IMG/VR virus record: IMGVR_UViG_3300020477_001008
Span: 178,647 to 242,646 of that record
Length of the DNA stretch: 64,000 nt
Direction: 5' to 3' (one strand)
A program made the position numbers and the translations under genes. Below the pieces are notes generated by a model. That model ran no database searches. It was not told where the DNA came from and saw only the letters and a program-made list of their open reading frames with translations. Below, piece after piece: positions 4,445-54,487 of the stretch (within the stretch, counting starts at the first letter, position 1; every line of letters begins with the position of its first letter).

Positions 4445-4450
4445 TCAACA

Positions 4451-4457
4451 ATAAATA
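4451..4457 (+). promoter_or_regulatory. T4-like late promoter box ATAAATA, 5 nt before sufS ATG
   Basis: One of at least 9 TAAATA-N5/N8-ATG instances in the window. Confidence 0.55.
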
Positions 4458-4462
4458 TTATT

Positions 4463-5668
4463 ATGCACAATATTCGAAAACAATTTCCCATATTTGATAA
4501 AACATTACCTAACGGTAAAAAATTAGTATATTTAGATAGTGCTAATTCTTCACAAAAACCGAAAAGGGTATTAGATAGATTATATGATTTTTATGCACAA
4601 GAATATAGTAGTGTTGGGAGAAGTATACACCAGTTAAGTACAGGTGCAAGTAAATGTTTAAATGATAGTAGAGAAGCAGTTGCAAAATTTTTAAATGCTG
4701 GTTCTGTAGATGAAATTGTTTTTACTAAAAGTGCCACAGAAGCTATTAATACGATTGCAGAAAGTTTTGGCAGAACTCAACGTGATCATTATGAAATAAT
4801 TTGTTCTGAATTAGAACATAATTCAAATTATCTTCCTTGGCATTTGCAAAGAGCTCATAAAAATGCAACAATTAAATTTATTCCTTTAAAAGATGATTAT
4901 ACATTAGATGTAGATAAGCTAGAAAGTTTAATTACTAAAAAAACTAAAATGATAGCAATAACTCATTTATCAAATGTTACTGGAGAAGTAATTAATGTTA
5001 AAAAAATATGTGAGATAGCACACAGTAAAGGAATAGCAGTTTTTGTAGATGGTACACAAGGTGCACCACATATGAAAGTTGATGTACAAGATATTGATTG
5101 TGATTTTTATTGTATTAGTGGTCATAAAATGTACGGACCTTCAGGCGTTGGGGCTTTGTACGCCAAAGAAAAATGGTTAGATGAATTATCGCCTTTTCAA
5201 GGTGGTGGTGGAACGGTACTTGATGCAACGCAAAGTGTTATTCAATATGCAGATGGACCAAAAAAATGGGAAGCTGGAACACACCCAGTTGCTGAAATTG
5301 TAGCATTAAAAGAAGCAATTGATTTTTATTATGATGTTGGATTTGATAATATGTTAAATCACGAAAAACAATTAGTTGAGTATTTGTATGAAAAATTAGC
5401 ATCTGATAATGATATTGAGTTACTATGTGGTAATAAGCCTAATGCTGTTTTATCATTTAATATTAAAGGAATACATCACGAAGATATGTCAATGTTTTTA
5501 GATGAATATGGTATTGCTACAAGACCAGGTCAACATTGTGCTATGTTATTCCATAAAAGGTACAGTTTAACTGGTTCTGTTAGAGTATCATTAGGTGTAT
5601 ATAATACCAAAGAAGAAATGGACTTTTTCTTACAGTCTTTGGGTGAAATTAAGAAGAGATTATCCTAA
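4463..5668 (+). CDS. sufS: Cysteine desulfurase, SufS type
   Basis: YLDSANSSQKP, DGTQG, SGHKMYGP (PLP Lys), EAGT, RPGQHCA (catalytic Cys). Confidence 0.93.
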   Translation: MHNIRKQFPIFDKTLPNGKKLVYLDSANSSQKPKRVLDRLYDFYAQEYSSVGRSIHQLSTGASKCLNDSREAVAKFLNAGSVDEIVFTKSATEAINTIAESFGRTQRDHYEIICSELEHNSNYLPWHLQRAHKNATIKFIPLKDDYTLDVDKLESLITKKTKMIAITHLSNVTGEVINVKKICEIAHSKGIAVFVDGTQGAPHMKVDVQDIDCDFYCISGHKMYGPSGVGALYAKEKWLDELSPFQGGGGTVLDATQSVIQYADGPKKWEAGTHPVAEIVALKEAIDFYYDVGFDNMLNHEKQLVEYLYEKLASDNDIELLCGNKPNAVLSFNIKGIHHEDMSMFLDEYGIATRPGQHCAMLFHKRYSLTGSVRVSLGVYNTKEEMDFFLQSLGEIKKRLS

Positions 5669-5673
5669 TCCTA

Positions 5674-5702
5674 TTGACTTCCTGATAAGTATTTTATATA
5701 AT
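5674..5702 (+). promoter_or_regulatory. Sigma70-type promoter
   Basis: TTGACT-N17-TATAAT upstream of rplL. Confidence 0.75.
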
Positions 5703-5739
5703 ACTGATGTACAATTAAATATAATTAATAAGGAAAACT

Positions 5740-6210
5740 ATGTCAGAAGATGAAGTAAAAAAAGCTGAAGAAACAAAGGCAGAAGAAAAGCCAGTAGAAC
5801 CAAAAGCTGAAGAAACATCTAAAACTATTACAAGAAATTTAGATGCTATTGTTGAAGAACTTGGACAATTAACAGTTATGGAAGCGGCCGATCTTGCTAA
5901 AAAATTAGCTAAAGCTTGGGATATTGATTTAGATAATATGGCGGCCGGTGTTGCACCAGCAGGTGGTGGCGCCGCGGGAGCTCCAGCAGACGCAGATGCT
6001 CCTGTAACAGTTATATTAAAAGATTTTAAAGAAGGTACTAAAATTAATGTCTTAAAAGCAATTAAGGCAATTAAAGGTTTAGGACTAATGGAATCTAAAC
6101 AATTTGTAGAAGCATTACCTAAAGAAGTTGATTCAGAAATACCAAGAGATAAAGCAGAAGAAATTAAAAAACAATTGGAAGAAGTTGGCGGTAACGTTGA
6201 AATAAAATAA
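5740..6210 (+). CDS. rplL: Ribosomal protein bL12 (L7/L12), divergent, with acidic N-terminal extension
   Basis: [20 protein letters not shown], Ala/Gly hinge, [41 protein letters not shown]. Confidence 0.9.
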
Positions 6211-7634
6211 TGTTAGATGAGCATAAGGTAGGAAAAGATTATAAAGAAGGCTTTACTACGGACATTGAAGCCTATACACTACCCCCTGGTCTAAATGAAG
6301 ACGTTATTAAAAAGATATCAAGTTTTAAAAAAGAACCACAATGGCTTTTAGACTGGAGACTAAAAGCTTATAAGGTTTGGCTGAATATGAAACAGCCTGA
6401 GTGGGCAAAGTTAGATATTAAGCCAATTGACTATCAAGCAATATCATATTATTCAACACCTAATCCTAAATTAAAATCTTTAGATGAATTAGATCCTAAA
6501 ATTTTAGAAACATATAATAAGTTAGGTATTCCATTACACGAACAAAAAGCATTAGCAGGTGTGGCCGTTGATGCAGTATTTGATTCTGTATCTGTAGCTA
6601 CAACGTACAAAGCAGATTTAGAAAAACAAGGTATACTTTTTTGTAGCTTTAGTGAAGCAGTAGAAAAATATCCAGAAATAGTTAAAAAATATTTAGGTAG
6701 TGTAGTACCACAAGGTGATAATTTTTTTGCTTGTTTAAATTCAGCTGTATTTACAGATGGTTCATTTGCTTATATTCCTAAAGGAGTTAGATGTCCTATG
6801 GAACTATCAACTTATTTTAGAATAAATGCGGCCAACACAGGACAATTTGAAAGAACATTAATTATATGTGAAGATGATGCATACGTATCTTATCTAGAAG
6901 GATGTACAGCACCAATGCGTGATGAAAATCAATTACACGCCGCGGTAGTTGAATTAGTAGCAAAAGAAAATGCAGAGATAAAATATTCAACAATACAAAA
7001 TTGGTATCCAGGAGATGAAGATGGAAAAGGTGGTGTATATAATTTTGTAACTAAACGTGGTAAATGTCAAGGACGTAAAAGTAAAATATCTTGGACACAA
7101 TTAGAAACAGGTTCAGCATTAACTTGGAAGTATCCTTCTTGTGTATTAATGGGAGATTATTCAGTAGGAGAGTTTTATTCAGTAGCAGTATCAACAGGTA
7201 AACAACAAGCTGATACAGGAACTAAAATGATACATTTAGGAAAACATACAAAATCAACAGTTATATCAAAAGGTATTTCAGCAAAACAAGGAAAGCAAAC
7301 TTATAGAGGATTAGTATCAATGGGTGGTAATGCTAAAAAATCACAAAACTATACTCAATGTGATTCGTTGCTTCTTGGAGATAAGTGTTCAGCACTTACT
7401 ATACCTTATATTAAAAGTAAAACAAAATCTTCTAAATGCGAACACGAAGCGTCAACATCAAAAGTATCTGATGAACAATTATTTTATTTAAGACAACGTG
7501 GACTTAAAGAAGAAGATGCTGTGAACTTAATTGTAAATGGTTTTGTAAAAGAAGTAACTAAACAGTTACCAATGGAGTTTGCAGTTGAGGCCAATAAACT
7601 TTTATCAGTAACATTAGAAGGATCAGTAGGATAA
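6210..7634 (+). CDS. sufB: Fe-S cluster assembly scaffold SufB
   Basis: [62 protein letters not shown]. Confidence 0.97.
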
Positions 7635-9961: not shown

Positions 9962-10891
9962 ATGATGAGAAAAATAATAAGCACAGCCTTGGTTGTATTA
10001 TTTGCAGGTTTTCTTTTTTCATTAACAGCTTGTAGTGAAGCTGAAGCAGTAGAAACAAATATCTACGGTTCAATAAACTATAAAGTTAGTAATGATGAAG
10101 ACACAAACGGCAAACACAATTTAAAGGCCGAAAATAACTCATCTTATGTTGGTATAGATGCCAGCGAAGGTATAGGCGAAGGCATAACAGGTTTCGCTAA
10201 ATTAGAAGTTGGCGTTGATACTGACGACAGTAATAACAATCCTTTTGATTCAAAGTTAGCCTATGTAGGTTTAAACTTTGGTGAGATTGGATCTGTATCT
10301 GCTGGGCGACAGTCATCTCCGTTCACTGATAATGTTAGTGGAAACACAGATGTATTTGAAGTTTATGGTTCAGGTGCTGATCAAAGTTTGTTCGTAAGAG
10401 ATACAAACACGATTGCGTACTCGAACGTATTAGGCCCACTTACATTTGATGGCTTGGCCAAAATAGATGGATCTACTGGTAAAAGTGGTGTAGATGTTGG
10501 AGAAGCAACAGTTACATACAATGGCAGTACGTTCACAGTATCAGGCGGTATGTCTAATGATAATGTCAATGACATTGATTATTATGGTGTTGGACTTACA
10601 GCAGATGCTTCATCTATAGGGCTTCCAATAACTGTGGGTTATACTCACACGTTAAAAGATGCCGCAACTGATGTAACAGGCAATGAAATCATTGGATCTT
10701 ATTCTACAGGTAATACAACAATTACAGGTGGATACGGTAAAATCGAAGATTCAACAGCATTTTATACTGCCGGTGCATCATTTGGAATAACTGATTCTTT
10801 ATCTACGTATGTTGAGTATGAACATTCAGATAAAACTGGATCATCTAATGATACAGACAATTATTCCACAGGTCTTAAATTTACTTTCTAA
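9962..10891 (+). CDS. Gram-negative outer-membrane porin
   Basis: Signal peptide, IYGSINY first strand, SSYVGIDASEGIGEG, AYVGLNFG...GR, amphipathic strands, C-terminal GLKFTF with terminal Phe. Confidence 0.85.
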   Translation: MMRKIISTALVVLFAGFLFSLTACSEAEAVETNIYGSINYKVSNDEDTNGKHNLKAENNSSYVGIDASEGIGEGITGFAKLEVGVDTDDSNNNPFDSKLAYVGLNFGEIGSVSAGRQSSPFTDNVSGNTDVFEVYGSGADQSLFVRDTNTIAYSNVLGPLTFDGLAKIDGSTGKSGVDVGEATVTYNGSTFTVSGGMSNDNVNDIDYYGVGLTADASSIGLPITVGYTHTLKDAATDVTGNEIIGSYSTGNTTITGGYGKIEDSTAFYTAGASFGITDSLSTYVEYEHSDKTGSSNDTDNYSTGLKFTF

Positions 10892-13539: not shown

Positions 13540-13704
13540 ATGAAATTTATGGTATTACTATTTTTTGTGTTAGTAGTTGGTTGTGCAAACAACAAAGTAA
13601 GAATTAACGAATCATACCAAATGGAAAAGCCATATACCTACCCTGAAGAAAGGAATGTATTACAGGCAGTTCCAATTATTCCTGTACACATTGAAAGATT
13701 ATGA
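13540..13704 (+). CDS. Small putative lipoprotein
   Basis: MKFMVLLFFVLVVGC lipobox-like signal; start moved from 13510, which lies inside the hairpin. Confidence 0.5.
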   Translation: MKFMVLLFFVLVVGCANNKVRINESYQMEKPYTYPEERNVLQAVPIIPVHIERL

Positions 13705-14033
13705 TTAAGATTATTATTTTAGCATATATGATGAATACAAACCCAATGGCAACAGCAGAAGAATTCCAAATGGGTAAAACATTTGAAACAATGGAAGCTT
13801 GTAAAAGAGAATTAACTTTGCAATCAAGAGGTATACCTCAAGTTTATGATGTCACTTGGGACTTTGTAGTTCAAGGTGATTTTAAATGGGATTGGGTAAT
13901 TGCGGCCTGTGTAGATGAATCAACCGGAGAAAAATTTAAAGTATTTCCTGCGTATGATAACGGTGTACCAGAAGGCATTGACGAACTTCTTAAAGCAACT
14001 GAAGAAGGATATGTACCAGGATTAGATGCATAA
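13701..14033 (+). CDS. Hypothetical protein
   Basis: Coupled 110 aa ORF. Confidence 0.65.
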   Translation: MIKIIILAYMMNTNPMATAEEFQMGKTFETMEACKRELTLQSRGIPQVYDVTWDFVVQGDFKWDWVIAACVDESTGEKFKVFPAYDNGVPEGIDELLKATEEGYVPGLDA

Positions 14034-14097
14034 TTAAACCTGTAACATACTTTTTTCGTTGCATTAGTTAAAATAACACTTTATACTAAATATTATT

Positions 14098-14700
14098 ATG
14101 AATAGATCCATTTTTTCAAAATACAATATATTTCTAGAGTGGTGGTGGTTTTTCTGCTCACTTATCTTAATTTTCTTTGTACTAGGAACAGTTAACTTAT
14201 ACGAAATAGTATGGAATGCTGACCAAACTAAAATATCTTATATTATTTTAGCATTGTTTGGTGCAGTATCAGTATTTTGTGGACGCGAAGCTTGGAAACT
14301 CTCTAAACTTAAAAGAGATAACTTAGATGCTGAAGTGTCTCTTAAAACAAAATATGAGACTGGTTGGTTTGCAAGTGAGATATGTTTAACATTAGGTTTG
14401 ATTGGAACGGTAAGTGGATTTATCTTAATGTTATATGGAGCATTCTCTGATTTGAACATTTCAGATCCTCATAGTGTTCAAGAAAGTTTAGGTAAAATGA
14501 GTGTAGGGATGAGTACAGCTCTATACACGACATTAGTTGGTTTGATATGTAGTGTATTATTGAAATTACAATTTTTTAGATTAGAAATGCATTTAGACAC
14601 TTACATAAAACATAGAGCAGTTGTATACAAAGCTAGGCTTATGGAAGAAGCACAAAAACTTACGGACCAAACTAATGAATCGAGATCGTTACAAGACTAG
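14098..14700 (+). CDS. MotA/TolQ/ExbB proton-channel family protein
   Basis: Four TM segments; LGLIGTVSGFI and GMSTALYTTLVGL motifs; preceded by CTAAATA box. Confidence 0.8.
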   Translation: MNRSIFSKYNIFLEWWWFFCSLILIFFVLGTVNLYEIVWNADQTKISYIILALFGAVSVFCGREAWKLSKLKRDNLDAEVSLKTKYETGWFASEICLTLGLIGTVSGFILMLYGAFSDLNISDPHSVQESLGKMSVGMSTALYTTLVGLICSVLLKLQFFRLEMHLDTYIKHRAVVYKARLMEEAQKLTDQTNESRSLQD

Positions 14701-15313
14701 TATAGCATTTATTGATTTGCTTTTTAACATAACCATTGGACTGGCTATGTTGTTTATCATTGCATTTCTTTTAATAAATCCAATTGCTAAAAAAGGTGAT
14801 ATCATTGTTAATGCAGAATTTATTATTACTATGTCTTGGCCAAAAGAAAGTAAAGACGATATTGATTTATATGTAATGGATCCAGCTGGAAATATAGTTT
14901 ATTTTAGAGATAAAGATAATGGTTTGATGCACTTAGATAGAGATGATTTAGGTGATAAAAATGATCAGATATCTACTGATGCAGGAATTATTAGTTTTGA
15001 TTTAAATGAAGAACACTTAACAATAAGAGGAATAGTGCCTGGCGAATATATTGTAAATGCACATTGGTATTCAAAAGCAACGTATTCATTTAAAACACAA
15101 GAAGGTAATAAGTATGAACCAAGTGATACGATTCCAGTAACTATTAAGGTAGAAAAATTAAATCCTTATTCTGTAGTTTATGTTGATACTAGAGTATTTT
15201 CTAAAGCTGGTGAAGAACAAACATTTCTTAGATTTTATGTAGATGCAAAAGGTAATGTAACAAAGAAAAACAATTTAGCTAAAGCTTTAGTTATGGGAGG
15301 CGATAGTAATTAA
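14675..15313 (+). CDS. ExbD/MotB-like single-pass partner with periplasmic beta domain
   Basis: AFIDLLFN (Asp in TM) then ITMSWP..DDIDLYV..P.G..VYF...LDRDD; start at ATG 14675. Confidence 0.6.
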   Translation: MNRDRYKTSIAFIDLLFNITIGLAMLFIIAFLLINPIAKKGDIIVNAEFIITMSWPKESKDDIDLYVMDPAGNIVYFRDKDNGLMHLDRDDLGDKNDQISTDAGIISFDLNEEHLTIRGIVPGEYIVNAHWYSKATYSFKTQEGNKYEPSDTIPVTIKVEKLNPYSVVYVDTRVFSKAGEEQTFLRFYVDAKGNVTKKNNLAKALVMGGDSN

Positions 15314-15838
15314 ATGGATATAATCACAGGACATATAGCAGTTATAATCAGTATAGCAATTTTAATTAGTTTTGTTATATTAGCAATCGTTAAAAGACCT
15401 AAAGTAAAACTTTTTGTTAAGATTGCATCTACTACAATGGCAGTTGGAACTGTTATTGCTTTATATTTTGCTTTAGAAACTATGTATGGATGGCCTTGGA
15501 AAACCACTTTCCCAACTGGAAAATATACATATATCAGTCATACCGTTAGTGCAGATGAAGAGGAAATTTACATATGGCTAATTGATAGGAATAAAACTAG
15601 TGACTATGCTTTTTGGCAAAAATGGTTAATTAATGATAGACAACCAAGGAACATTAGTGTATTATATGATGATATGTTACACGAACAGCTACAAAAAATT
15701 CAAGAAATGGCGGCTGGACAACCATATCCGGTTGAACTAAAATCTATGAAATTAAAAGATGTAAAAGAAGGTGAAATAAATCGTTCGGATGAAACTTTAA
15801 ATTATATCTTACCAGATGTCAACATACAGGCAAAATAA
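15314..15838 (+). CDS. Two-TM membrane protein, third gene of the Mot/Exb-like triad
   Basis: Two N-terminal hydrophobic helices, then GWPW and a soluble domain; tightly coupled. Confidence 0.6.
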   Translation: MDIITGHIAVIISIAILISFVILAIVKRPKVKLFVKIASTTMAVGTVIALYFALETMYGWPWKTTFPTGKYTYISHTVSADEEEIYIWLIDRNKTSDYAFWQKWLINDRQPRNISVLYDDMLHEQLQKIQEMAAGQPYPVELKSMKLKDVKEGEINRSDETLNYILPDVNIQAK

Positions 15839-16140
15839 TGACTGAAGAAAAATCAAATCAGCAAGTACAAACAGATGTAGAAATAAAAGAACCAAGTAGA
15901 TATAATGTTCTGTTTATGAATGATGATTATACACCAATTGATTTTGTTCAACAATTATTAACAGATATATTTTATCATAAGCCTGATGATGCATCAGAAT
16001 TAGCAAAATTAATTCACGAAAAAGGTAAAGCAATTGTAGGAACATATACATATGAGGTTGCTGAACAAAAATCAATAGAATCAACAACGATGGCTAGATC
16101 CGCTGGACATCCTTTACAAGTAACAATAGAACAAGAATAA
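15838..16140 (+). CDS. clpS: N-end-rule adaptor ClpS
   Basis: YNVLFMNDDYTPIDFV, IHEKGKAIVGTYTYEVAEQK, HPLQVTIE. Confidence 0.92.
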   Translation: MTEEKSNQQVQTDVEIKEPSRYNVLFMNDDYTPIDFVQQLLTDIFYHKPDDASELAKLIHEKGKAIVGTYTYEVAEQKSIESTTMARSAGHPLQVTIEQE

Positions 16141-17108
16141 TGTTTAGATTTTTTACCGCTAGAAAATGGCTATTATGGGCCTGGTTAGGTTCTGCTATTA
16201 TTTTAGGATCACTTTGGGTACAAGTAGAAATTGATGTTAAAATAAATGAATGGTTTGGTGTGTTTTATGATATGATTCAAAAAGCACTTGCAACACCGAA
16301 TGCAATTACAATAGAAGAATACTTTGGAAGTTTATTATCGTTTATAACACTTGCAGGAATATATGTTGGTGTTTATGTTTTAATAAGTTATTTTACAGCA
16401 CACTTTCTTTTTAGATGGCGTACAGCAATGGTAGAATGGTACCATAGTGTTTACGATAAAGCTCGTAAAATTGAAGGTGCGGCACAACGGGTTCAAGAAG
16501 ATACAATTAAATTTAGTCGTATTATGGAAGGACTTGGTACAAGTCTAATTGAAGCTATAATGATTTTAATTCAATTTATTCCAATCTTATTTGGTTTAAG
16601 TATTGGTATACCAATTTTCTTTTTTGGTGATTGGGAATATGGATTAATAGTTGGTGCATTAGTTTGGACAATTGGTGGTACTGTATTCTTGATTGGATTA
16701 GGATGGTTATTACGACTAGTTGGTGTAGAATATGATATACAAAAGAAAGAGGCCGCATATAGAAAAATACTTGTAATAGCAGAAGACGATAATACTGTAA
16801 GACCAAAAACAATTAATGAGTTGTTTGATGATGTCCGACAAATTCACTTTTTAAGTTATCTACGTTATCTATATTTTAATATTGGGCGAATGGCATACTT
16901 ACAAGCCAATGTTTTATCAGCCTATGTATTTTTAGCACCAGCCATAGTTGCTGGAGTAATGACACTTGGAGTTATGCAACAAATTATAAGAGCATTTGGA
17001 AGAGTTGAAGGTTCTATGCAATATTTGTTAAAAGCTTGGCCAACAATCATTGAATTAATGAGTGTTTATAGAAGATTACGAGAATTCGAAGCTAAATTAC
17101 CAAAATAA
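16140..17108 (+). CDS. sbmA: SbmA/BacA peptide transporter
   Basis: INEWFGVFYDMIQKAL, FRWRTAM, IEGAAQRVQEDT, EYDIQKKEAAYRKILV, FGRVEGSMQYL, SVYRRLREFE. Confidence 0.85.
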   Translation: MFRFFTARKWLLWAWLGSAIILGSLWVQVEIDVKINEWFGVFYDMIQKALATPNAITIEEYFGSLLSFITLAGIYVGVYVLISYFTAHFLFRWRTAMVEWYHSVYDKARKIEGAAQRVQEDTIKFSRIMEGLGTSLIEAIMILIQFIPILFGLSIGIPIFFFGDWEYGLIVGALVWTIGGTVFLIGLGWLLRLVGVEYDIQKKEAAYRKILVIAEDDNTVRPKTINELFDDVRQIHFLSYLRYLYFNIGRMAYLQANVLSAYVFLAPAIVAGVMTLGVMQQIIRAFGRVEGSMQYLLKAWPTIIELMSVYRRLREFEAKLPK

Positions 17109-17165: not shown

Positions 17166-17726
17166 ATGTTTATACAAACTGAAGCAACACCAAACCCAAA
17201 TGCTTTAATTTTTCAACCAGGTTGTGAAATTATGGGATCAAAGCCTTATAAATCTTATAACAGAAATAATCCTGTTGATGATTCACCATTAGCAGAAATT
17301 TTGTTTAATATTGATGGTATTGAAGATATAATGTTTGGAAAAGACTTTATAACAATAAGCAAAAAAGCTTCAATAGAGTGGGCAGTTTTAAAAGCACCAA
17401 TATTGCATAGTTTAAATGATTACTTGAGCAATAATAATCCAGTTGTAATAAATGATAATCCATCTCCGGCTTGTGAAGATATTAATGAAGATGATAATGA
17501 TGAAGTTATAGAACGAATTAAACAATTATTAGAAACAAAAGTTAGACCAGCAGTTGCAAAAGACGGTGGAGATATTATATTTCACAAATATGAAAAAGGA
17601 GTTGTCTATCTTGAAATGTTTGGTGCTTGTTCTGGTTGCCCAAGTTCAGAGTATACTTTAAAAATGGGTATTGAAAGTATGTTGAAACATTATATACCAG
17701 AAGTAAAAAGGGTTGATGCAATATGA
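17166..17726 (+). CDS. Nfu/NifU-like Fe-S carrier (alphaproteobacterial type)
   Basis: MFIQTEATPNPNALIF, SPLAEILF, VRPAVAKDGGDI, GACSGCPSS, GIESMLKHYIPEV. Confidence 0.9.
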   Translation: MFIQTEATPNPNALIFQPGCEIMGSKPYKSYNRNNPVDDSPLAEILFNIDGIEDIMFGKDFITISKKASIEWAVLKAPILHSLNDYLSNNNPVVINDNPSPACEDINEDDNDEVIERIKQLLETKVRPAVAKDGGDIIFHKYEKGVVYLEMFGACSGCPSSEYTLKMGIESMLKHYIPEVKRVDAI

Positions 17727-18028
17727 GTGATAAAGTAAAAGAAGAAATTATTAAAAATTTAAGAACAGTATTTGATCCAGAAATTTCTATTAACATTTAT
17801 GACCTTGGATTAATTTATAATATTGATATGAGTGAGTTACCTAAAGTAACAATTACTCATACATTAACATCAGTATTTTGCCCAGCCGCGGATCAAATTA
17901 TTGAAGATATCCAAATGGCAACTGAATCAGTAGCAGAAGTGGACCAATGTATGATTATTACTACATTTGATCCACCTTTTGGTCCAGAAATGATGAGTGA
18001 AGAAGCAAGATTAATATTAAACATTTGA
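17723..18028 (+). CDS. SufT / DUF59 Fe-S maturation protein
   Basis: LRTVFDPEISINIYDLGLIY, TLTSVFCP, FDPPF..EMMSEEARL. Confidence 0.85.
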   Translation: MSDKVKEEIIKNLRTVFDPEISINIYDLGLIYNIDMSELPKVTITHTLTSVFCPAADQIIEDIQMATESVAEVDQCMIITTFDPPFGPEMMSEEARLILNI

Positions 18029-20168: not shown

Positions 20169-21245
20169 ATGTATACAATAGAACAAATAAAAACAATACA
20201 CTTAGAAATTACCCAAAAGTGTCAAGCCGCTTGTCCAATGTGCGACAGAAATCAAAATGGCGGAGACCTTAATCCACATATAAAATTAGACGAATTAACA
20301 TTACAAGACTGTAAACAAATTTTTACACCTTCATTTATATCACAATTAAAGAAAATGTATATGTGTGGTAATTTAGGTGATCCTGTAATTGCTACTGATA
20401 CTTTAGAAGTATTTGAATACTTTAGACAACACAATCCAAACATATGGTTGAATATGCATACAAACGGTGGTGCTAAAAAACCTGAGTGGTGGAAAGATTT
20501 AGCAAAAGTTATTGGCAAAAATGGAGACGTTACTTTTAGTGTTGATGGGTTAGAAGATACAAATCATTTATACAGGCAAAATGTTAATTGGAAACTTGTA
20601 GACCAATCAATGAAAGCATATATTGAAGGTGGTGGAAAAGTTAGATGGGATTATTTAATATTTGATCACAATCAACATCAAGTAGAAGAAGCAGAACAAT
20701 ATGCCAAGTCAATTGGTGTACATAAATTTCAAGCAAAGAAAACAGGTAGATTTATTACTACTACAAGTCAAGCTAAACAATCACACCAAGCAGTAAATCG
20801 TAAAGGTAAAGAAACTCAAGAATTAAAAAAGCCAGATGATAAGTTTGTAAACAAAGCTCTTAAAAAACAAGACTCTTTACTTGACAAATATGGTTCTATG
20901 GATGCATACTACGATAAAGTACCAATTTGGTGCAAAGTAAAAGATGAAGGTAGTTTATATATTAGTGCAGAAGGACTAGCATTACCTTGTTGTTGGACAG
21001 CAGGTAGAATGTACAAATGGTGGCATAAAGATCCTAAAGTAGAACAAATATGGAATCATATAGATGAAGTAGGTGGAAAACAAATGCTTGATGCTAAAAA
21101 CGGATTAGATAAAGTTTTTAATACTGGAATATTTGATTCAATTGAAAAGAGTTGGAATATTGATGGCTGTAATAACGGCAAATTAAAAGTATGTTCTATG
21201 AAATGTGGTAAAGAATTTGATCCATTTGCAGAACAGTTTAACTAA
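20169..21245 (+). CDS. Radical SAM protein, class B (core + C-terminal Cys module)
   Basis: CQAACPMC, GNLGDP, HTNGG, FSVDGLEDTNHLYR; C-terminal C...PCC...CSMKC. Confidence 0.9.
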   Translation: MYTIEQIKTIHLEITQKCQAACPMCDRNQNGGDLNPHIKLDELTLQDCKQIFTPSFISQLKKMYMCGNLGDPVIATDTLEVFEYFRQHNPNIWLNMHTNGGAKKPEWWKDLAKVIGKNGDVTFSVDGLEDTNHLYRQNVNWKLVDQSMKAYIEGGGKVRWDYLIFDHNQHQVEEAEQYAKSIGVHKFQAKKTGRFITTTSQAKQSHQAVNRKGKETQELKKPDDKFVNKALKKQDSLLDKYGSMDAYYDKVPIWCKVKDEGSLYISAEGLALPCCWTAGRMYKWWHKDPKVEQIWNHIDEVGGKQMLDAKNGLDKVFNTGIFDSIEKSWNIDGCNNGKLKVCSMKCGKEFDPFAEQFN

Positions 21246-21272
21246 TTAAATTACCAATAAATATAGTAAAAG

Positions 21273-22745
21273 ATGACTGATAAACCTAAACTACCATCGA
21301 AAACGTTTTGTGCTTTACCTTGGATGCACTTGTCAACAAGGCCTGACGGAAATATGCGAGTATGTTGTACAGCAAACGCAAGTTCTGTTGGTGCTACAAA
21401 TGATAAGGAATTTGGAGGACAAGTGGGACTATTACGTAATGAAGATGGTGTACCGGCAAATTTAAACAATGCAGATTTAATGTCTAGTTGGAATAACAGT
21501 TATATGAAAAATGTGCGTAAGCAGATGTTAACTGGAAAAAGACCACCAAGTTGTATTAAATGTTATAAAGAAGAAGATGCAGGACATATGAGTAAGCGTC
21601 AATGGGAAACTGAATATTGGTTAAACAGATATTCAATGGATGAAATAATTGGCGAAACAACTGAAGATGGTGCTATTCCACCTAAGATTAGATATATTGA
21701 TTTACGTATGGGATCTAAATGTAATTTAAAATGTATTATGTGTAGTCCACACGATAGTTCATTGTGGGTAAAAGACTGGCAGGCTGTTTATCCTAAAATT
21801 AAAAATCCTATATTAAAAGAATCAATGAGCTGGCAGAATAAAGGAAAAGTTCACGGAGCAAATTACAATTGGCATAAAGACAATCCTACATTCTGGGATC
21901 AATTATATGAGCAAATACCTCATATGTATCAGTTATATTTTGCTGGAGGCGAATCTACTATTATTGAAGAGCATTATACTTTATTAGAAGAAGTAATTAG
22001 ACGTGGATATGCTCACAAGATAGAATTACGATACAACTCAAATGGTGTCGAAATGCCTGATAGATTATTTGAGATTTGGAGCAAATTTAAGAGAGTAAGA
22101 TTTCATTATAGTGTTGACTCTATAGAAGAGATGAATAGTTATATACGTTTTCCAGCAGACTGGGATAATACAGTTAAGCAGTTTCATCTATTAGATAATA
22201 CAGATGATAAAGTTGAAGTTACAATTGCCTGTGCAGTACAGGCCTTGAATATACATTATATTCCTGACTTTATAAAATGGAAGCTTGAACAGAATTTTAA
22301 AAAGATTAATGTATGGCCATTTGGTGCTGGAATGATTAATTATCATTTTGTATATTGGCCACCTCAATTAAATGTAAAAGTATTACCACAATGGTTTAAA
22401 GAAAGAGTTAAACAGAAGTACGAGGAGTTTTATCCTTGGCTAGAAGAAAATTGGAAATTAAGTGGTGCTCCAAGTAAAGAAGCATTTTTAAACGCAGACT
22501 ACGGTATCAAAAGATTAAAAGGAATGGTTAAATTTATGATGTCAGAAGATTGGTCTGTGAGAATGCCAGAGTTTAGAGAGTACATAACACAATTTGATAT
22601 ACAGAGAAACACAGACTTTAAAAAAGTATTTCCTGATATGGCAGGCCTTTTAGATGAAACACTTGACAATAGTATTGAGACCAAACTAGGTGATAAAGTG
22701 GATGAAAAAACTGAAAAGGAACTTGCAGATGGCGGAACGATCTAA
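21273..22745 (+). CDS. Radical SAM protein, class A (N-terminal twitch-like module)
   Basis: CALPW...CC...CIKC, then DLRMGSKCNLKCIMC, AGGES, SVDS; ATAAATA 9 nt upstream. Confidence 0.92.
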   Translation: MTDKPKLPSKTFCALPWMHLSTRPDGNMRVCCTANASSVGATNDKEFGGQVGLLRNEDGVPANLNNADLMSSWNNSYMKNVRKQMLTGKRPPSCIKCYKEEDAGHMSKRQWETEYWLNRYSMDEIIGETTEDGAIPPKIRYIDLRMGSKCNLKCIMCSPHDSSLWVKDWQAVYPKIKNPILKESMSWQNKGKVHGANYNWHKDNPTFWDQLYEQIPHMYQLYFAGGESTIIEEHYTLLEEVIRRGYAHKIELRYNSNGVEMPDRLFEIWSKFKRVRFHYSVDSIEEMNSYIRFPADWDNTVKQFHLLDNTDDKVEVTIACAVQALNIHYIPDFIKWKLEQNFKKINVWPFGAGMINYHFVYWPPQLNVKVLPQWFKERVKQKYEEFYPWLEENWKLSGAPSKEAFLNADYGIKRLKGMVKFMMSEDWSVRMPEFREYITQFDIQRNTDFKKVFPDMAGLLDETLDNSIETKLGDKVDEKTEKELADGGTI

Positions 22746-24003
22746 AACATACTGTCCTTTACCTTTTATTCATTCACACGCAGGGTTAAATGGAAAATAT
22801 AAACCTTGTTGTAATTCAGATACATCAGTTCACGGTTACAAATATCATATAGAAAAATTAGGTTATAAAGATTGGTTTTATCATCCAGAAATGGATAAAC
22901 TAAGAAATGATTTATTAAATGGTGTACAAAATCCAATGTGTGATGTTTGTTGGAAACAAGAAGCATTTAGTTCAGATAGTTATAGAACAGTTTATATAAA
23001 AAAATATCAAGATGATAATATAAATCATAAAGATCCAAAAATAACTTATATTGATATGAAGCTATCAAATGAATGTAATTTAGCTTGTACTCATTGTGAT
23101 TATTCTAACTCATCACAAATTTATAAAGATATGTTATCTATAGAAGAGCAAGGTTTGGAGTTACCACCTCAATGGGAAAGAAGTCCTAATTTTGAAAAAA
23201 GATTAGAAGATAAAGATAGAAAAGATATGTATCATAAGCAACCACAAAACGTTGTTGATGAATTAATTGATTTAATGCCAGACCTTAAACACTTAAAAGT
23301 TACAGGTGGAGAGCCTACTATTACAAAAGAATTTTTTAGATTAGTAGATTATGCAGTTGAAAATAACTATGCAAAAAATCTTAATTTGTATATTACTACT
23401 AATGGAACAAGGTTTACTCCTGACTTTATAAAAAAATTACAACACTTTAAAAATTTACATTTAACAGTTAGTTGTGATGGATATGGAGATACTTACGAAT
23501 ATATTAGATATCCATTTACTTGGAAAATGTTTGAGAAAAGATTAAAAGTTGTTGCAGAACATTTAAAGTCAACTAATCATAATATTAGATCATTAAATTT
23601 TAACTGTGTAGCTCAGATGCAAAACATTGAAAACATACCAAAACTTGAAAATTGGATTTATGATTTATTTCAGCAACAAGCATCTCTTTATGTACAGCCA
23701 CATATTAATCCTGTTGATAGTACAAATCATTCTAAACTATTACCAAAGCATATTTTAGAAAAAGCACTAGAAGATATAAGAATATCAAATGCAAAATCAG
23801 GATATGATTTAAAAATGTATACAGATATGTTAGAATGGTTAATTAAAAACTTTAATAGTGATGAATTAAAAATATATAGATCAGTCAAATATCTAAAAAA
23901 TATGAAAAATGCACTTGTTAATCTTGACAAGATAAGAAAACAAGACTATAGAACTAATCTTGAACCATTAACAAGAGAATGGGTGGAGGGTTTAAATGTC
24001 TAA
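22729..24003 (+). CDS. Radical SAM protein, class A
   Basis: CPLPF...PCC...CDVC; CNLACTHC; TGGEP; SCDG; start set at MAERSK. Confidence 0.9.
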   Translation: MAERSKTYCPLPFIHSHAGLNGKYKPCCNSDTSVHGYKYHIEKLGYKDWFYHPEMDKLRNDLLNGVQNPMCDVCWKQEAFSSDSYRTVYIKKYQDDNINHKDPKITYIDMKLSNECNLACTHCDYSNSSQIYKDMLSIEEQGLELPPQWERSPNFEKRLEDKDRKDMYHKQPQNVVDELIDLMPDLKHLKVTGGEPTITKEFFRLVDYAVENNYAKNLNLYITTNGTRFTPDFIKKLQHFKNLHLTVSCDGYGDTYEYIRYPFTWKMFEKRLKVVAEHLKSTNHNIRSLNFNCVAQMQNIENIPKLENWIYDLFQQQASLYVQPHINPVDSTNHSKLLPKHILEKALEDIRISNAKSGYDLKMYTDMLEWLIKNFNSDELKIYRSVKYLKNMKNALVNLDKIRKQDYRTNLEPLTREWVEGLNV

Positions 24004-25246
24004 AACATTTAAGTTTTGTAAGGCACCATTTGGTAGTATATATGTAAGACCAAATGTAAGACCAAATCCACAAGCTGGTAAACAAACTGAGATTAGCTTC
24101 TGCTGTGTGCAGACTGAAAAATATATGTTAAAAGAAAATGAAACAGTTAATGATTTTTGGAAAAGCGACTGGGCAAAAGAACATAGGCAACAGTTTCTTA
24201 ATAAAGAGTGGCCTTCTTCTTGTAGTTATTGTGAATGGAAAGAAAATAACAATATTGAAAGCGATATTGGAACACACCAACAGATTACTATTAAAGAGTA
24301 TAATATTTCTGATGGCAATGAAATGGCTAAACCAAAATATGTTGATTATAGACCAGATAATTTATGCAACCTAATGTGTACAATGTGTGGTCCTAGTAAT
24401 AGTAATTTAATTGAAGATATGTGGCGTGAAATACCTATTAGTCCTGGGTGGCACCACGAAGCAAATGCAGGAATAGATGGTGATGTAACTATTGAAGAAG
24501 AAGAATTAGTAACCAAAGAATTACTTGGTAATCATACAATGCAATTAAAAGTTTTAGGTGGAGAACCTACTATTAATAAAAAAGTTCATTCAGTATTTCA
24601 ATATGCGATTGATAAAGGATATGCACAAAATATAGATTTAAAAATAACAACCAATTTTACTAATGTAAACAAAACTTATGATATGTTTGATAAGTTTAAG
24701 TCTTGCAGGATACAAGCTAGTATTGATGCAACAGGACCAACATATGATTATATTAGAAGACCAGCTAAATGGTCAGCTGTAAAAGAAAAGCTTTTACAAT
24801 TTGCTGATAGATACGAAAATTCTTATCCAAAAATGCAATGGAATTTTAATATTGTTTGGCAATTAGCAAATTGCTTTACTGTTAAAGATTGGTTACCTGA
24901 ATTACTTGATATGTTCTACAATGATCCAAAGCTAAAAAAAATAGCAAAACAAGACGTAGGATTATCATTAATTAATTGTGATGGAACAGGTATAACACTA
25001 GACGCTATACCAGATAGTATGAAACATTATATAATTGATGATTTAGAAGATTTATTAAAAGATTGGAAACATAATCCTTTCGCATTTAAAGATATTGAAA
25101 CATTAATCAAGTATACTGAAAATGCAAAGTTTACCAATTTGCAACATAGAGCATTTAAAAGAAAATTTACATTAATGGATCAATATAAAAAAACAAATAT
25201 GTTTGAATTAAGTCCAAGGTTTAAGGAGTTGTATGACTTTAGATAA
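23996..25246 (+). CDS. Radical SAM protein, class A
   Basis: CKAPF...FCC...CSYC; DNLCNLMCTMC; LGGEP; SIDA. Confidence 0.9.
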   Translation: MSKTFKFCKAPFGSIYVRPNVRPNPQAGKQTEISFCCVQTEKYMLKENETVNDFWKSDWAKEHRQQFLNKEWPSSCSYCEWKENNNIESDIGTHQQITIKEYNISDGNEMAKPKYVDYRPDNLCNLMCTMCGPSNSNLIEDMWREIPISPGWHHEANAGIDGDVTIEEEELVTKELLGNHTMQLKVLGGEPTINKKVHSVFQYAIDKGYAQNIDLKITTNFTNVNKTYDMFDKFKSCRIQASIDATGPTYDYIRRPAKWSAVKEKLLQFADRYENSYPKMQWNFNIVWQLANCFTVKDWLPELLDMFYNDPKLKKIAKQDVGLSLINCDGTGITLDAIPDSMKHYIIDDLEDLLKDWKHNPFAFKDIETLIKYTENAKFTNLQHRAFKRKFTLMDQYKKTNMFELSPRFKELYDFR

Positions 25247-26153
25247 AAAATTGTTTTTAACAAAACACGCCGCTATCTATGATCCTGAATTTCAAGATAG
25301 ATTGTGGAATGCACCTTGGCAAGATTGGTTAAGTAAATCAGGTTATTTTAATGTTAAAGATGAATATATAGAAACTATTGATAAATGGATTTATAATTCT
25401 AATGAAATTAAATTTAATGGGTTAGACAGATTTAAGTATAAAGATTTAATTCACGGAACAACTCAAGCTTTTGATGAAGCATATTACAGATATAAAGAAC
25501 GTAGGTTACGAACTTATAGAGGAGAGTATGCTTATCATAAAAGAGTGCAAGGAGTAAAGAATTTTATTGATACTAAAGAAGGTGATTATATACCAATTGA
25601 AGAAAATGATTGGGTAGTAATAAGTTTACCATTTTGTGGTAATGGTGCTGAGCCACCATTTTTAGAAAAAGTTTTAAATGATTGTGCAAATTTAAATGTA
25701 CCAGTATTAATTGATTGTGCTTGGTTTGGAACACACTATTGGAAAAAAACATTTACTTTAGATAATCCTTGTATTAAAGAAGTATGTTTTAGTATTTCAA
25801 AAGGAATAGGAATGGGTAATATGAGAACTGGTATTCGATATTCTAATTACGATGATCATTTACCTATTAGACAACATAATAATTATAACCATTTGCCTTT
25901 AGGATTATCACAAATTGGTATATGGCAAATGCAAAAGTTTAGTTCTGATTTTATTGGTAACAAGTATAATGAAATGGTAAAAACAGTTTGCGAACAAAAT
26001 AATATTATAATGACTCCAGTTATGCATATTGGGTTACTTGAAAAAGGACATCCTGATTATGAATATTTTTTAACTGATGATGTTTATAGTAAAGTTGGAA
26101 TACGTGAAGCTGTAAAAAAGTATAGAAAGGAATTGCGAAATGAAGAAAGATAA
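25233..26153 (+). CDS. PLP-dependent (aminotransferase fold I-like) protein inside the radical SAM array
   Basis: VISLPF..G, VLIDCAWFG, FSISKG (PLP Lys), RTGIR. Confidence 0.6.
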   Translation: MTLDKKLFLTKHAAIYDPEFQDRLWNAPWQDWLSKSGYFNVKDEYIETIDKWIYNSNEIKFNGLDRFKYKDLIHGTTQAFDEAYYRYKERRLRTYRGEYAYHKRVQGVKNFIDTKEGDYIPIEENDWVVISLPFCGNGAEPPFLEKVLNDCANLNVPVLIDCAWFGTHYWKKTFTLDNPCIKEVCFSISKGIGMGNMRTGIRYSNYDDHLPIRQHNNYNHLPLGLSQIGIWQMQKFSSDFIGNKYNEMVKTVCEQNNIIMTPVMHIGLLEKGHPDYEYFLTDDVYSKVGIREAVKKYRKELRNEER

Positions 26154-52761: not shown

Positions 52762-52988
52762 TTGATTGGGATAGACATAAAAGACCACAGTATGAACCAC
52801 CAAGTTGGATTGAGTGGCAACCAACTAATCCTATGAAATATTTGTTTATGCTTTGTCTTGTTCTTTGGATACTTCCAGTTTTATTTGGATTAATTTTAAC
52901 ACCCTTAGGTGCAATAGTTAATATTTTATTTGTTGATTGGGTTATGTATAAAAGAGATACTTCTTTTTTAAACCGTGATCGTGATTAA
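52758..52988 (+). CDS. Small membrane protein
   Basis: Two hydrophobic segments. Confidence 0.55.
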   Translation: MIDWDRHKRPQYEPPSWIEWQPTNPMKYLFMLCLVLWILPVLFGLILTPLGAIVNILFVDWVMYKRDTSFLNRDRD

Positions 52989-52996
52989 ATATTATT

Positions 52997-54475: not shown

Positions 54476-54487
54476 GTAAATATTACT

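What the first reader, a model, noticed from the sequence alone, without database searches (positions are those of the whole stretch)
14086..15838. Late-expressed MotA/ExbB-type ion-motor triad in a phage
Seen: CTAAATA box, a MotA/TolQ/ExbB-like gene, an overlapping partner with a TM Asp (FIDLLFN) and a non-OmpA periplasmic domain, and a third membrane gene. Known: 5:2 MotAB/ExbBD/TolQR/ZorAB complexes turn ion flux into rotation. Inference: a phage-encoded energy transducer, with the third protein as a TonB/TolA-like effector, for envelope remodelling, superinfection exclusion, lysis timing or interference with host Zorya/Tol systems.
Basis: partly seen in the sequence, partly recalled or inferred. 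Interest (0 to 1): 0.7.

Follow-up and report, generated by a model that had tools for sequence, protein, structure and literature searches.

The report
Phage-borne MotA/ExbB-like membrane motor triad
A marine T4-like jumbo phage carries a three-gene membrane cassette built like the ion-driven Tol/Ton/flagellar stator motors but with new periplasmic parts; the cassette is common in uncultured ocean phages, some cultured Rhizobium phages and some bacteria, and nobody has described it.

Summary
Window 14098-15838 encodes three co-directional genes. A is a 200-aa, 4-TM protein that passes Pfam MotA_ExbB. B overlaps A by 26 nt and has one TM with a conserved Asp plus a periplasmic beta-sandwich. 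C has a TM hairpin plus a small domain with no annotated relative. The record is a T4-like phage (Gp23, terminase), 242.6 kb and about 55% complete.

The A-B-C order recurs in at least 131 of 157 related loci. These include over 200 IMG/VR contigs in many different contexts, cultured Rhizobium phages where all three genes are "hypothetical", and proteobacterial chromosomes. B's domain has the TerD/DUF2135 fold (Z 9-11), not the ExbD or OmpA fold. C shows no TonB or TolA feature. A carries the PomA-type GxxGTxxG + TT ion-site signature.

A TAAATA box lies 5 nt before A's ATG. This arrangement is a genome-wide signal (37 genes against 0.6 expected), and a similar box precedes gene A in many other phages. 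Exact-match metatranscriptome contigs cover A, B and C.

My verdict is a previously undescribed branch of the MotA/ExbB/TolQ motor family, kept as a phage cassette. The physiological output is unknown, and 5:2 assembly could not be tested here.

The parts
14086..14092 (+). CTAAATA box, a T4-late-promoter-like TAAATA element 5 nt upstream of the start codon of gene A
   Evidence: Sequence. TAAATA placed 5-8 nt before an ATG is found at 37 of 306 genes against 0.57 expected. TAAATA lies within 45 nt upstream of gene A in 28 of 54 distinct viral upstream regions, against about 1.3 of 54 expected (0.025 per region).
14098..14700 (+). Gene A: 200-aa, 4-TM MotA/ExbB/TolQ-family channel subunit. GxxGTxxG is at residues 100-107 (14395-14418) and the Thr144-Thr145 pair is at 14527-14532.
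   Evidence: Pfam PF01618 at 34.8 bits, cut-off 22.9. Four hydrophobic segments with loop charges that fit an N-in topology. The motifs align to PomA G154-G161/T158 and T185/T186. 565 homologues found.
14675..15313 (+). Gene B: 212-aa stator-B-like subunit. Short N-terminal tail, one TM (about residues 9-34) with Asp14 (14714-14716), a linker of about 12 residues, and a TerD/DUF2135-fold beta-sandwich (about residues 46-205, 14810-15289).
   Evidence: AlphaFold model pLDDT 89. TerD structures match at Z 9.4-10.7 over 133-145 residues. DUF2135 proteins match in AFDB. Asp14 is D in 137 of 149 sequences, and D62, D64, D90, D91, D97, N111 and E113 are essentially invariant. B directly follows A in 165 of 167 loci.
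15314..15838 (+). Gene C: 174-aa protein with a TM hairpin (about residues 3-57) with a KRPK loop, and a 110-aa alpha/beta domain predicted to be periplasmic (15485-15835). The family is unannotated.
   Evidence: AlphaFold model pLDDT 84. Hydropathy. The family clusters across 146 of 167 loci and sits right after B. 3,508 representative clusters at E<=1e-3, nearly all stand-alone proteins of 150-240 aa. No Pfam, NCBIfam, PADLOC or PDB match.

Best explanation
A, B and C are one conserved membrane module of the MotA/ExbB/TolQ kind.

A is the ion-channel subunit. It has four TMs and almost no cytoplasmic domain. B is the axle-type subunit, whose TM Asp takes up and releases the coupling ion. A's PomA-like three-threonine site suggests the ion may be Na+ in the marine members. 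B's periplasmic part is a metal-binding (probably Ca2+) TerD-fold sandwich held close to the membrane by a short linker. C is an inner-membrane hairpin protein with a small periplasmic domain and is the likely third subunit or output partner.

Ion flow through A/B would drive a conformational or rotary cycle. Its work is done at the periplasmic face of the inner membrane, not at a cytoplasmic rotor and not across the whole periplasm.

The module is an extra system in bacteria, beside Tol and Ton. Phages carry it as a long-held cassette. This phage probably transcribes it from a late-type promoter, to supply or boost that envelope function in the infected diderm host.

Shown here: family membership of A, conservation and gene order of the trio, the folds of B and C, motif conservation, the promoter-like box, and presence in RNA libraries.

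Inferred: physical assembly, stoichiometry, coupling ion, topology, and the physiological output.
For: - A passes Pfam MotA_ExbB. It aligns to the TolQ/ExbB/PomA TM hairpins, with GxxGT and TT on the ion-site residues. According to PMC10374538, T158/T185/T186 mark Na+ stators.
- B follows A in 165 of 167 loci, and A-B-C is the order in at least 131 of 157 loci.
- B Asp14 is conserved in 137 of 149 sequences, including Rhizobium phages.
- B's domain has the TerD fold with invariant acidic residues.
- The C family is large and always stand-alone next to B.
- Viral copies form their own clades apart from the cellular clades.
- Cultured Rhizobium phages RHph_I1_18 and P10VF have all three genes.
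- Marine alphaproteobacterial genomes of about 1 Mb keep the triad beside canonical ExbD, TonB and TonB-dependent receptors.
- The late-type box is enriched genome-wide and recurs before gene A in other phages.
- Exact-match metatranscriptome contigs lie on A, B and C. In the same runs the capsid gene is 30-100 times deeper and the stretch after it is empty, so the signal is RNA.
Against: - No assembly was shown.
- B has no detectable sequence similarity to ExbD, TolR or MotB beyond the TM Asp.
- One gammaproteobacterial clade of 12 sequences lacks the Asp at the aligned position.
- The invariance of A's motifs is partly built in, because the locus scans used those peptides as search patterns.
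- Freshwater and groundwater members also carry TT, so the Na+ reading is weak.
- No gp55-type sigma factor was found in the 55%-complete genome.
- Neighbouring genes give no consistent functional clue.
Confidence: 0.55

Rival explanations
1. The triad is a Ton-like energiser for uptake. It powers the phage's own outer-membrane TonB-dependent receptor, perhaps together with the phage porin and the SbmA/BacA-like inner-membrane transporter, so that the infected cell keeps importing a scarce nutrient such as iron or a cofactor for the phage's Fe-S and radical-SAM genes.
For: - The genome encodes a complete TonB-dependent receptor: Plug E 4.6e-17 and barrel E 2e-36.
- The complete 328-kb relative encodes one too.
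- No TonB_C domain is found in these phages.
- An SbmA/BacA-like gene lies 1-3 genes after C in several different viral contexts, and here in a tightly packed string A-B-C-ClpS-SbmA.
- A porin-like gene and Suf/NifU genes lie nearby.
Against: - Eight other triad-bearing phage records, including a complete 527-kb genome and two cultured Rhizobium phages, have no TonB-dependent receptor.
- Bacteria with the triad also have canonical ExbD and TonB.
- C has no TonB_C fold, no long linker, and two TMs.
- B's short linker keeps its domain at the inner membrane.
Confidence: 0.15
2. The triad is a lysis-clock or membrane-potential device. It is made late and senses or dissipates the ion-motive force, setting holin triggering or lysis timing, or it acts in the lysis cassette itself.
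For: - The late-type promoter box.
- In one phage lineage a Peptidase_M15 endolysin-type gene lies directly upstream of A, and in another a GH108 lysozyme lies four genes upstream.
- All three proteins are membrane proteins.
Against: - Cellular homologues sit in ordinary chromosomal contexts and in streamlined genomes, not in prophage lysis cassettes.
- In the window the neighbours are chaperone, protease and Fe-S genes.
- Strict conservation of a motor-type ion site and a folded periplasmic domain is more than a simple leak would need.
Confidence: 0.12
3. The triad is a superinfection-exclusion or anti-phage device. It would work like a Zorya-type sensor of envelope perturbation, or as a decoy that interferes with host Zorya or Tol.
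For: - A's best named HMM hits are ZorA models (PADLOC E 1.7e-7, NCBIfam E 6e-6).
- Temperate Rhizobium phage 16-3 carries a B-like gene.
- TerD-family proteins are historically linked to phage-inhibition phenotypes (my own knowledge, not tested here).
Against: - The ZorA scores are far below the family cut-offs (25 against 500 bits).
- A has no ZorA tail.
- B has no peptidoglycan-binding domain.
- No ZorC/D-type effector and no PADLOC hit for B or C.
- Bacterial copies lie beside housekeeping genes rather than in defence islands.
Confidence: 0.08
4. The triad is not a working phage function. It would be host DNA mis-assembled into a viral contig, or recently captured genes carried passively.
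For: The surrounding block is rich in cell-like genes (DnaK, ClpXPS, Suf, NifU, porin). The record is an uncultured contig estimated to be 55% complete.
Against: - The same contig carries Gp23 and terminase.
- The block recurs in a complete 328-kb genome with terminal repeats and in contigs of 255-314 kb.
- Viral B sequences form their own deep clades.
- The triad is present in cultured phage genomes.
- It is seen in RNA libraries.
Confidence: 0.02

Closest known systems
TolQ-TolR-TolA and ExbB-ExbD-TonB (proton-driven 5:2 inner-membrane motors with a third, membrane-anchored periplasmic partner)
   Same: - A three-gene unit in the order channel subunit, TM-Asp subunit, third inner-membrane-anchored protein with a periplasmic domain.
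- A aligns to the TolQ and ExbB TM2-TM3 hairpins (hhalign 80% and 53%), with the conserved Thr positions.
- B's Asp lies near the cytoplasmic end of its single TM, as in TolR D23 and ExbD D25.
- There is no cytoplasmic output domain.
   Different: - A has four TMs with the N-terminus inside, as in MotA, not three.
- B's periplasmic domain is a TerD/DUF2135 sandwich on a linker of about 12 residues, not the ExbD fold (hhalign below 1%).
- C has a TM hairpin and a 110-aa globular domain, with no conserved SHLS His, no long linker, and no TonB_C or TolA fold.
- Bacteria with the triad also have canonical Ton and Tol genes.
PomA-PomB / MotA-MotB flagellar stator units
   Same: - Four-TM A subunit.
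- GxxGTxxG on the third TM and a Thr-Thr pair on the fourth TM, aligned to PomA T158, T185 and T186, the Na+ site.
- Overlapping A/B genes.
- TM Asp in B.
   Different: - A's cytoplasmic loop is about 30 residues, against about 100 in the flagellar proteins, so there is no torque-generating interface.
- B has no plug or OmpA-like peptidoglycan-binding domain.
- E. coli MotA is not detectably similar by hhalign.
- The loci contain no flagellar genes.
ZorA-ZorB of the Zorya anti-phage system
   Same: The best-scoring named HMMs for A are ZorA models. Both are MotAB-like pairs with a non-flagellar role in phage-bacterium conflict settings.
   Different: - A is 200 aa and lacks the long ZorA tail.
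- Scores are far below the family cut-offs.
- B has no peptidoglycan-binding domain.
- No ZorC, ZorD or ZorE partner is present.
- The triad is carried by the phage and by housekeeping regions of bacteria.
TerD-family / DUF2135 (YfaP-type) Ca2+-binding beta-sandwich domains
   Same: B residues 46-208 superpose on the TerD crystal structures 3ibz, 2qz7 and 2qng (Z 9.4-10.7) and on AFDB DUF2135 proteins. The acidic residues are invariant, as expected for a metal site.
   Different: - No Pfam TerD hit, and only sub-threshold DUF2135 hits for bacterial copies.
- The domain is fused to a stator-type TM helix and predicted to be periplasmic, whereas classical TerD proteins are soluble and cytoplasmic (the latter from my own knowledge).

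Membership tests
MotA/ExbB/TolQ superfamily (Pfam PF01618), for A | Profile score above the curated cut-off | tested here: met
   34.8 bits against a cut-off of 22.9. 35.1 bits in the six-frame search. Nearly all of the 120 listed homologues carry PF01618.
MotA/ExbB/TolQ superfamily, for A | Conserved polar residues (Thr) on the two pore-lining helices | tested here: met
   T104, T144 and T145 are invariant in 158 sequences. This is partly circular, because the scans used these peptides as patterns. They align to TolQ T145/T178 and to PomA T158/T185/T186.
MotA/ExbB/TolQ superfamily, for A | Adjacent gene for a single-TM partner with a membrane-embedded Asp | tested here: met
   B follows A in 165 of 167 loci. 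Asp14 is D in 137 of 149 sequences.
MotA/ExbB/TolQ superfamily, for A plus B | Assembly as a 5:2 complex | not testable with these tools
   Complex prediction takes at most six chains. The 1:1:1 job gave no answer.
ExbD/TolR family (PF02472), for B | Sequence or profile similarity to ExbD/TolR | tested here: not met
   No Pfam hit at E<=0.1. hhalign probability 0.6-0.7% against E. coli TolR and ExbD.
ExbD/TolR family, for B | ExbD-type periplasmic domain | tested here: not met
   The model shows a TerD-fold beta-sandwich.
MotB/PomB/ZorB, for B | C-terminal OmpA-like peptidoglycan-binding domain | tested here: not met
   No OmpA-family hit. The fold is TerD-like. hhalign against E. coli MotB gives 0.5%.
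TonB/TolA, for C | TonB_C or TolA C-terminal fold | tested here: not met
   No Pfam or NCBIfam hit. Foldseek against PDB and AFDB returns only unannotated proteins or weak OB-like matches. No PF03544 anywhere in the genome.
TonB/TolA, for C | Single N-terminal TM with a conserved His (SHLS) and a long periplasm-spanning linker | tested here: not met
   C has two TM helices. No invariant columns, and only G59, P61, W88 and P111 are nearly invariant. The globular domain starts right after TM2.
Zorya (ZorAB plus effectors) | ZorA with a long C-terminal tail that scores above the family cut-off, plus ZorC/D/E neighbours | tested here: not met
   NCBIfam ZorA_4 gives 25.4 bits against a cut-off of 500. 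A is 200 aa. B and C have no PADLOC hit.
TerD fold, for the periplasmic domain of B | Structural superposition on solved TerD proteins | tested here: met
   3ibz, 2qz7 and 2qng match at Z 9.4-10.7 with 133-145 residues aligned, clearly above the next unrelated hits at Z<=6. Foldseek probability 1.0.
TerD fold, for the periplasmic domain of B | Ca2+-binding acidic motifs | tested here: inconclusive
   D62, D64, D90, D91, D97, N111 and E113 are near-invariant. They were not mapped residue by residue onto the TerD metal sites, and there is no Pfam TerD hit.
T4-type late transcription unit | TATAAATA-like box just upstream, enriched before genes genome-wide | tested here: met
   CTAAATA at 14086-14092. 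37 genes have TAAATA 5-8 nt before the ATG against 0.57 expected. The box recurs before gene A in 28 of 54 viral upstream regions.
T4-type late transcription unit | gp55-type late sigma factor in the genome, and transcript 5' ends at the box | tested here: inconclusive
   No match to the P10VF sigma factor, but the record is only 55% complete. Only assembled RNA contigs were available, so no 5' ends could be read.

The most novel reading that the evidence does not exclude
The triad is a new functional class of ion-driven 5:2 motor, the first carried by viruses. It would have a Na+-type ion site, a Ca2+-binding TerD-fold stator domain and its own output subunit C. Marine and rhizobial phages would switch it on late to drive an as yet unknown process at the periplasmic face of the host inner membrane. 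In this phage lineage that process could be energising the phage's own TonB-dependent receptor without any TonB.
Probability: 0.3. Interest if true: 0.8.

Novelty: new variant of a known kind. Interest (0 to 1): 0.62.

Why it matters
Only a handful of output types are known for the MotA/ExbB/TolQ motors: the flagellar rotor, TonB, TolA, GldM/PorM, the gliding complex and the ZorA tail.

This would add a further architecture. It is very common: thousands of 50%-identity clusters for C, and over 200 IMG/VR contigs in many different contexts. It is retained in bacterial genomes of about 1 Mb. It is also carried by phages, for which no ion-driven motor has been described in the literature I could search.

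It can be tested directly, because cultured Rhizobium phages (P10VF, RHph_I1_18 and relatives) carry all three genes.

If the phage copy changes envelope energetics, nutrient uptake or lysis timing in abundant marine hosts, it bears on how large ocean phages reprogram their cells.

Tried and rejected
- **Complex prediction.** Complex prediction on A+B+C at 1:1:1 with my own alignments gave no answer (score 0.01, controls not run). This counts neither for nor against binding. A 5:2 job exceeds the six-chain limit.
- **GenBank phage searches.** blastn of the locus and tblastn of A against GenBank phages found nothing. tblastn of B did find 29 Rhizobium and Sinorhizobium phage records.
- **Fold searches for C.** Foldseek against PDB gave nothing below E 0.1. 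VIA-align wide returned only helical-hairpin look-alikes of the TM part. AFDB returned only unnamed proteins.
- **ESM Atlas.** The B and C clusters are 'hypothetical', mostly viral.
- **Defence and annotation libraries.** PADLOC and NCBIfam have no hit for B or C, and only sub-threshold ZorA, MotA and TolQ hits for A.
- **hhalign of B** against E. coli TolR, ExbD and MotB showed no similarity.
- **hhalign of A** against E. coli MotA showed none.
- **The CTAAATA heptamer** on its own is not enriched. The shorter TAAATA at a fixed distance from start codons is.
- **gp55.** A search with the P10VF sigma factor found no match.
- **Literature.** Searches on jumbo phage, DnaK, ClpP, ExbB, TolQ, TerD, DUF2135 and TonB-dependent receptor found no description of the triad. 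The 'moraphage' lineage (PMC12619734) is a different group, freshwater with Bacteroidota hosts.
- **Rejected idea.** I considered that the triad replaces Ton or Tol in the small marine alphaproteobacteria. They have canonical ExbD and TonB too.
Full report
**What is there.**
- Window 14098-15838 holds three co-directional genes on the + strand.
- Gene A (14098-14700, 200 aa) scores 34.8 bits on Pfam PF01618 MotA_ExbB, above the cut-off of 22.9. It is the only such gene in the genome.
- Hydropathy gives A four TM segments (about 11-29, 44-62, 95-119 and 136-160). The loop charges fit an N-in, MotA-like topology, and the cytoplasmic loop is only about 30 residues.
- Gene B starts at the ATG at 14675, 26 nt inside A. 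Its product (212 aa) begins MNRDRYKTSIAFIDLLFN.
- Gene C (15314-15838, 174 aa) starts right after B's stop codon.
- ClpS (15838) and an SbmA/BacA-like gene (16140) follow with one-base overlaps. No convincing terminator lies within the string.

**The replicon.**
- The window is the last 64 kb of a single 242,646-bp virus record.
- The record has a T4-type Gp23 major capsid gene (E 3e-80) and a large terminase gene. CheckV puts it at about 55% complete.
- It is 32% G+C and almost all genes lie on one strand.
- It is rich in cell-like genes: DnaK, ClpX/P/S, SufS/B, NifU, a porin, many radical-SAM proteins, ten tRNAs and a permuted tmRNA.
- Near-identical DNA is found in many marine metagenomes.

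**Conservation of the trio.**
- A has 565 homologues in the large protein collection, mostly marine.
- Scans with an alignment of A found 217 IMG/VR stretches and 157 stretches in prokaryote genomes.
- In the 167 loci fetched, phmmer finds a B homologue directly after A in 165.
- BLAST clustering puts the third gene in one family in 146 loci, and the order A-B-C holds in at least 131 of 157. Most of the apparent exceptions are long antisense ORFs in G+C-rich genomes or loci that end early.
- The viral contexts differ widely:
  - the window's type: HSP20-DnaK-A-B-C-ClpS-SbmA, on contigs of 255-328 kb, one of them complete with terminal repeats;
  - a ThyX/PhoH/GH108 ... DnaJ/PDF/ClpB type;
  - a Peptidase_M15-A-B-C-...-DNA polymerase B type;
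  - several more.
- Cultured phages have the triad too. Rhizobium phage RHph_I1_18 has EVB91_122/123/124. A gives Pfam MotA_ExbB E 4.6e-6, and C gives hhalign 98%.
- P10VF has P10VF_191/192/193, next to its late sigma factor gene. All six genes are annotated 'hypothetical'.
- Phage 16-3 has a B-like p040.
- Cellular carriers are real:
  - Desulfobacterales and gammaproteobacterial MAG chromosomes;
  - the isolate Denitrobaculum tricleocarpae;
  - marine alphaproteobacterial MAGs of about 1 Mb, where the triad sits beside sufBCDS and a TonB-dependent-receptor/ABC-2 cluster.
- In many gammaproteobacteria a YkuD L,D-transpeptidase gene and a DUF302 gene precede A.
- Two 'Legionellales' MAG contigs (L102, L111) carry phage genes and are probably mis-binned phage.
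- A tree of B puts most viral sequences in their own clades, apart from the gamma-, delta- and alphaproteobacterial clades. The cassette is therefore old in phages, not a recent capture.

**The proteins.**

*Protein A.*
- G100xxG103T104xxG107 and T144-T145 are invariant in all 158 sequences. There is a caveat: these peptides were the scan patterns.
- In the PDB profile search they align to PomA G154-G161/T158 and T185/T186.
- Hu et al. (PMC10374538) report that these three threonines are conserved in all Na+-driven stators, and that T158 and T185 are Ala in H+ stators.
- E. coli TolQ and ExbB have Ala-Thr at the pair.
- The soil Rhizobium phage copies have Ala or Thr at the first site, and Ser-Thr or Cys-Thr at the pair.
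- This hints at Na+ coupling in the marine members. Freshwater members found by the biased scan also have TT, so the hint is weak.

*Protein B.*
- The AlphaFold model (pLDDT 89) has one TM helix (5-34), a short linker, and a beta-sandwich at 49-199.
- The sandwich matches TerD crystal structures (Foldseek probability 1.0; VIA-align Z 9.4-10.7 over 133-145 residues, with the next unrelated hits at Z<=6).
- It also matches DUF2135 proteins in AFDB.
- Weak sequence echoes are DUF2135/MG1 for bacterial copies and a subtilisin beta-jelly-roll.
- Asp14 is kept in 137 of 149 sequences. The 12 exceptions are one gammaproteobacterial clade with 'PFDPITAVLFKIIQ'.
- D62, D64, D90, D91, D97, N111 and E113 are near-invariant, as expected of a metal site.
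- B has no profile similarity to TolR, ExbD or MotB.

*Protein C.*
- The model (pLDDT 84) has a TM hairpin with a KRPK loop and a beta-beta-alpha-beta-alpha-beta-beta domain.
- By the positive-inside rule the domain is periplasmic.
- No library names it.
- A profile search finds 3,508 representative clusters, nearly all stand-alone proteins of 150-240 aa.

**Expression.**
- CTAAATA at 14086-14092 ends 5 nt before A's ATG.
- The heptamer is not enriched by itself.
- TAAATA ending 5-8 nt before an ATG occurs at 37 of 306 genes against 0.57 expected, with 19 at exactly 5 nt. The terminase and several genes of the structural module are among them.
- A second class has the box 17-30 nt upstream, with a Shine-Dalgarno sequence in between.
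- The T4 late promoter is TATAAATA and starts transcription about six bases downstream (my own knowledge). The 5-nt class would therefore give leaderless mRNAs. This is inference.
- TAAATA lies within 45 nt upstream of gene A in 28 of 54 distinct viral upstream regions, against about 1.3 of 54 expected (0.025 per region).
- No gp55 homologue was found in the incomplete genome.
- In two marine metatranscriptomes from samples that also hold the DNA, and in a third, contigs with zero or one mismatch lie on A, B and C at word depth 3-13.
- In the same runs the capsid-gene region reaches 100-1,200 and the stretch after it is empty. Contaminating DNA would not give that pattern.
- So the phage is active in situ and the triad is transcribed, at a few percent of capsid level.

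**How it most likely works.**
- The architecture is that of a MotAB/ExbBD/TolQR-type ion-driven unit.
- It has no cytoplasmic output, because A has almost no cytoplasmic domain and no tail.
- It has no reach across the periplasm, because B has a short linker and C has no linker.
- I therefore place its work at the periplasmic face of the inner membrane, with C as the probable third subunit or output.
- Assembly, 5:2 stoichiometry, coupling ion and target are inferred, not shown.

**What speaks for and against specific uses.**

*Uptake.*
- This phage and its complete 328-kb relative encode a full TonB-dependent receptor but no TonB_C domain.
- An SbmA/BacA-like gene recurs near the triad in several contexts.
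- However, eight other triad-bearing phage records have no such receptor.
- The small marine alphaproteobacteria with the triad also have canonical ExbD (all five), TonB_C (four of five) and receptors.
- The triad is therefore an additional system, not a Ton substitute.

*Lysis timing.* Late expression, and endolysin-type neighbours in two lineages, allow this role. Bacterial contexts do not fit it.

*Defence or exclusion.* This rests only on weak ZorA-model hits far below cut-off.

**Comparison and novelty.**
- A is a member of the MotA/ExbB/TolQ superfamily.
- B is not a member of the ExbD/TolR or MotB families, though it has their TM-Asp logic.
- C is not a TonB or TolA.
- The trio works like Tol/Ton in layout but differs in every periplasmic part.
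- I found no description of it in Pfam, NCBIfam, PADLOC, PHROGs or the searchable literature.
- A recent survey of MotAB relatives groups such non-flagellar pairs only as heterogeneous 'generic ion transporters' (PMC12505986).
- I rate it a new variant of a known kind.

Noticed in passing
Own genome G000 about 142818-144686 (L177:829-2697), outside the window. Also L178 in the 328-kb relative.: The phage encodes a complete TonB-dependent outer-membrane receptor: signal peptide, Plug E 4.6e-17, barrel E 2e-36. A DUF6580 membrane protein precedes it. The complete relative with terminal repeats has a receptor too. No TonB_C domain is found in either.
   Followed up: partly
Whole genome G000. In the window, for example 4446-4462, 14086-14097, 52980-52996 and 54471-54487.: TAAATA followed by exactly 5 (or 6-8) bases and then ATG precedes 37 genes against 0.57 expected. 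If this is the T4-type late box, these late mRNAs would start at or next to the start codon, which would make them leaderless. A second class has the box 17-30 nt upstream with a Shine-Dalgarno sequence.
   Followed up: partly
window 15838-17108: ClpS and an SbmA/BacA-like transporter (Pfam E 9.5e-136) follow C with one-base overlaps. An SbmA/BacA-like gene lies within three genes of the triad in several otherwise different viral contexts: L053, L064, L080 and L092.
   Followed up: partly
window about 20169-36973: A long run of large genes, several of them radical-SAM/SPASM proteins. It lies downstream of the Suf/NifU Fe-S assembly genes (4463-7634, 17166-18028).
   Followed up: no
window 9962-10891: A Gram-negative porin-like gene (Porin_1, E 1.6e-10) in a phage genome.
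   Followed up: no
window 13540-13704 and 13701-14033: Two small genes lie between DnaK and gene A. The first begins MKFMVLLFFVLVVGC, which looks like a lipoprotein signal. Neither has a family hit, and they are absent from related loci that place HSP20 or DnaK just before A.
   Followed up: partly
Own genome G000 172238-172557, outside the window: A permuted (two-piece) tmRNA gene with tag ADENLALAA. This gene form is typical of alphaproteobacteria and a few other groups (my own knowledge), so it hints at the host lineage.
   Followed up: no
L102 and L111 (contigs filed under 'Legionellales' MAGs): These contigs carry phage genes (family-B DNA polymerase, Peptidase_M15, zeta-toxin-like kinase) and group with viral sequences in the B tree. 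They are probably phage contigs binned into bacterial MAGs.
   Followed up: partly
L118-L147 (gammaproteobacterial loci): A conserved bacterial operon: YkuD L,D-transpeptidase, DUF302, A, B, C, and often a second C paralogue. It lies next to a divergent sigma-54 two-component pair and a cytochrome b561-like gene. This points to a cell-wall or envelope link for the cellular system.
   Followed up: partly
L168 (own genome 113653-117366): In marine metatranscriptomes the capsid-gene region of this phage reaches word depth 100-1,200 with exact matches. The phage was therefore actively infecting cells in the sampled water.
   Followed up: partly
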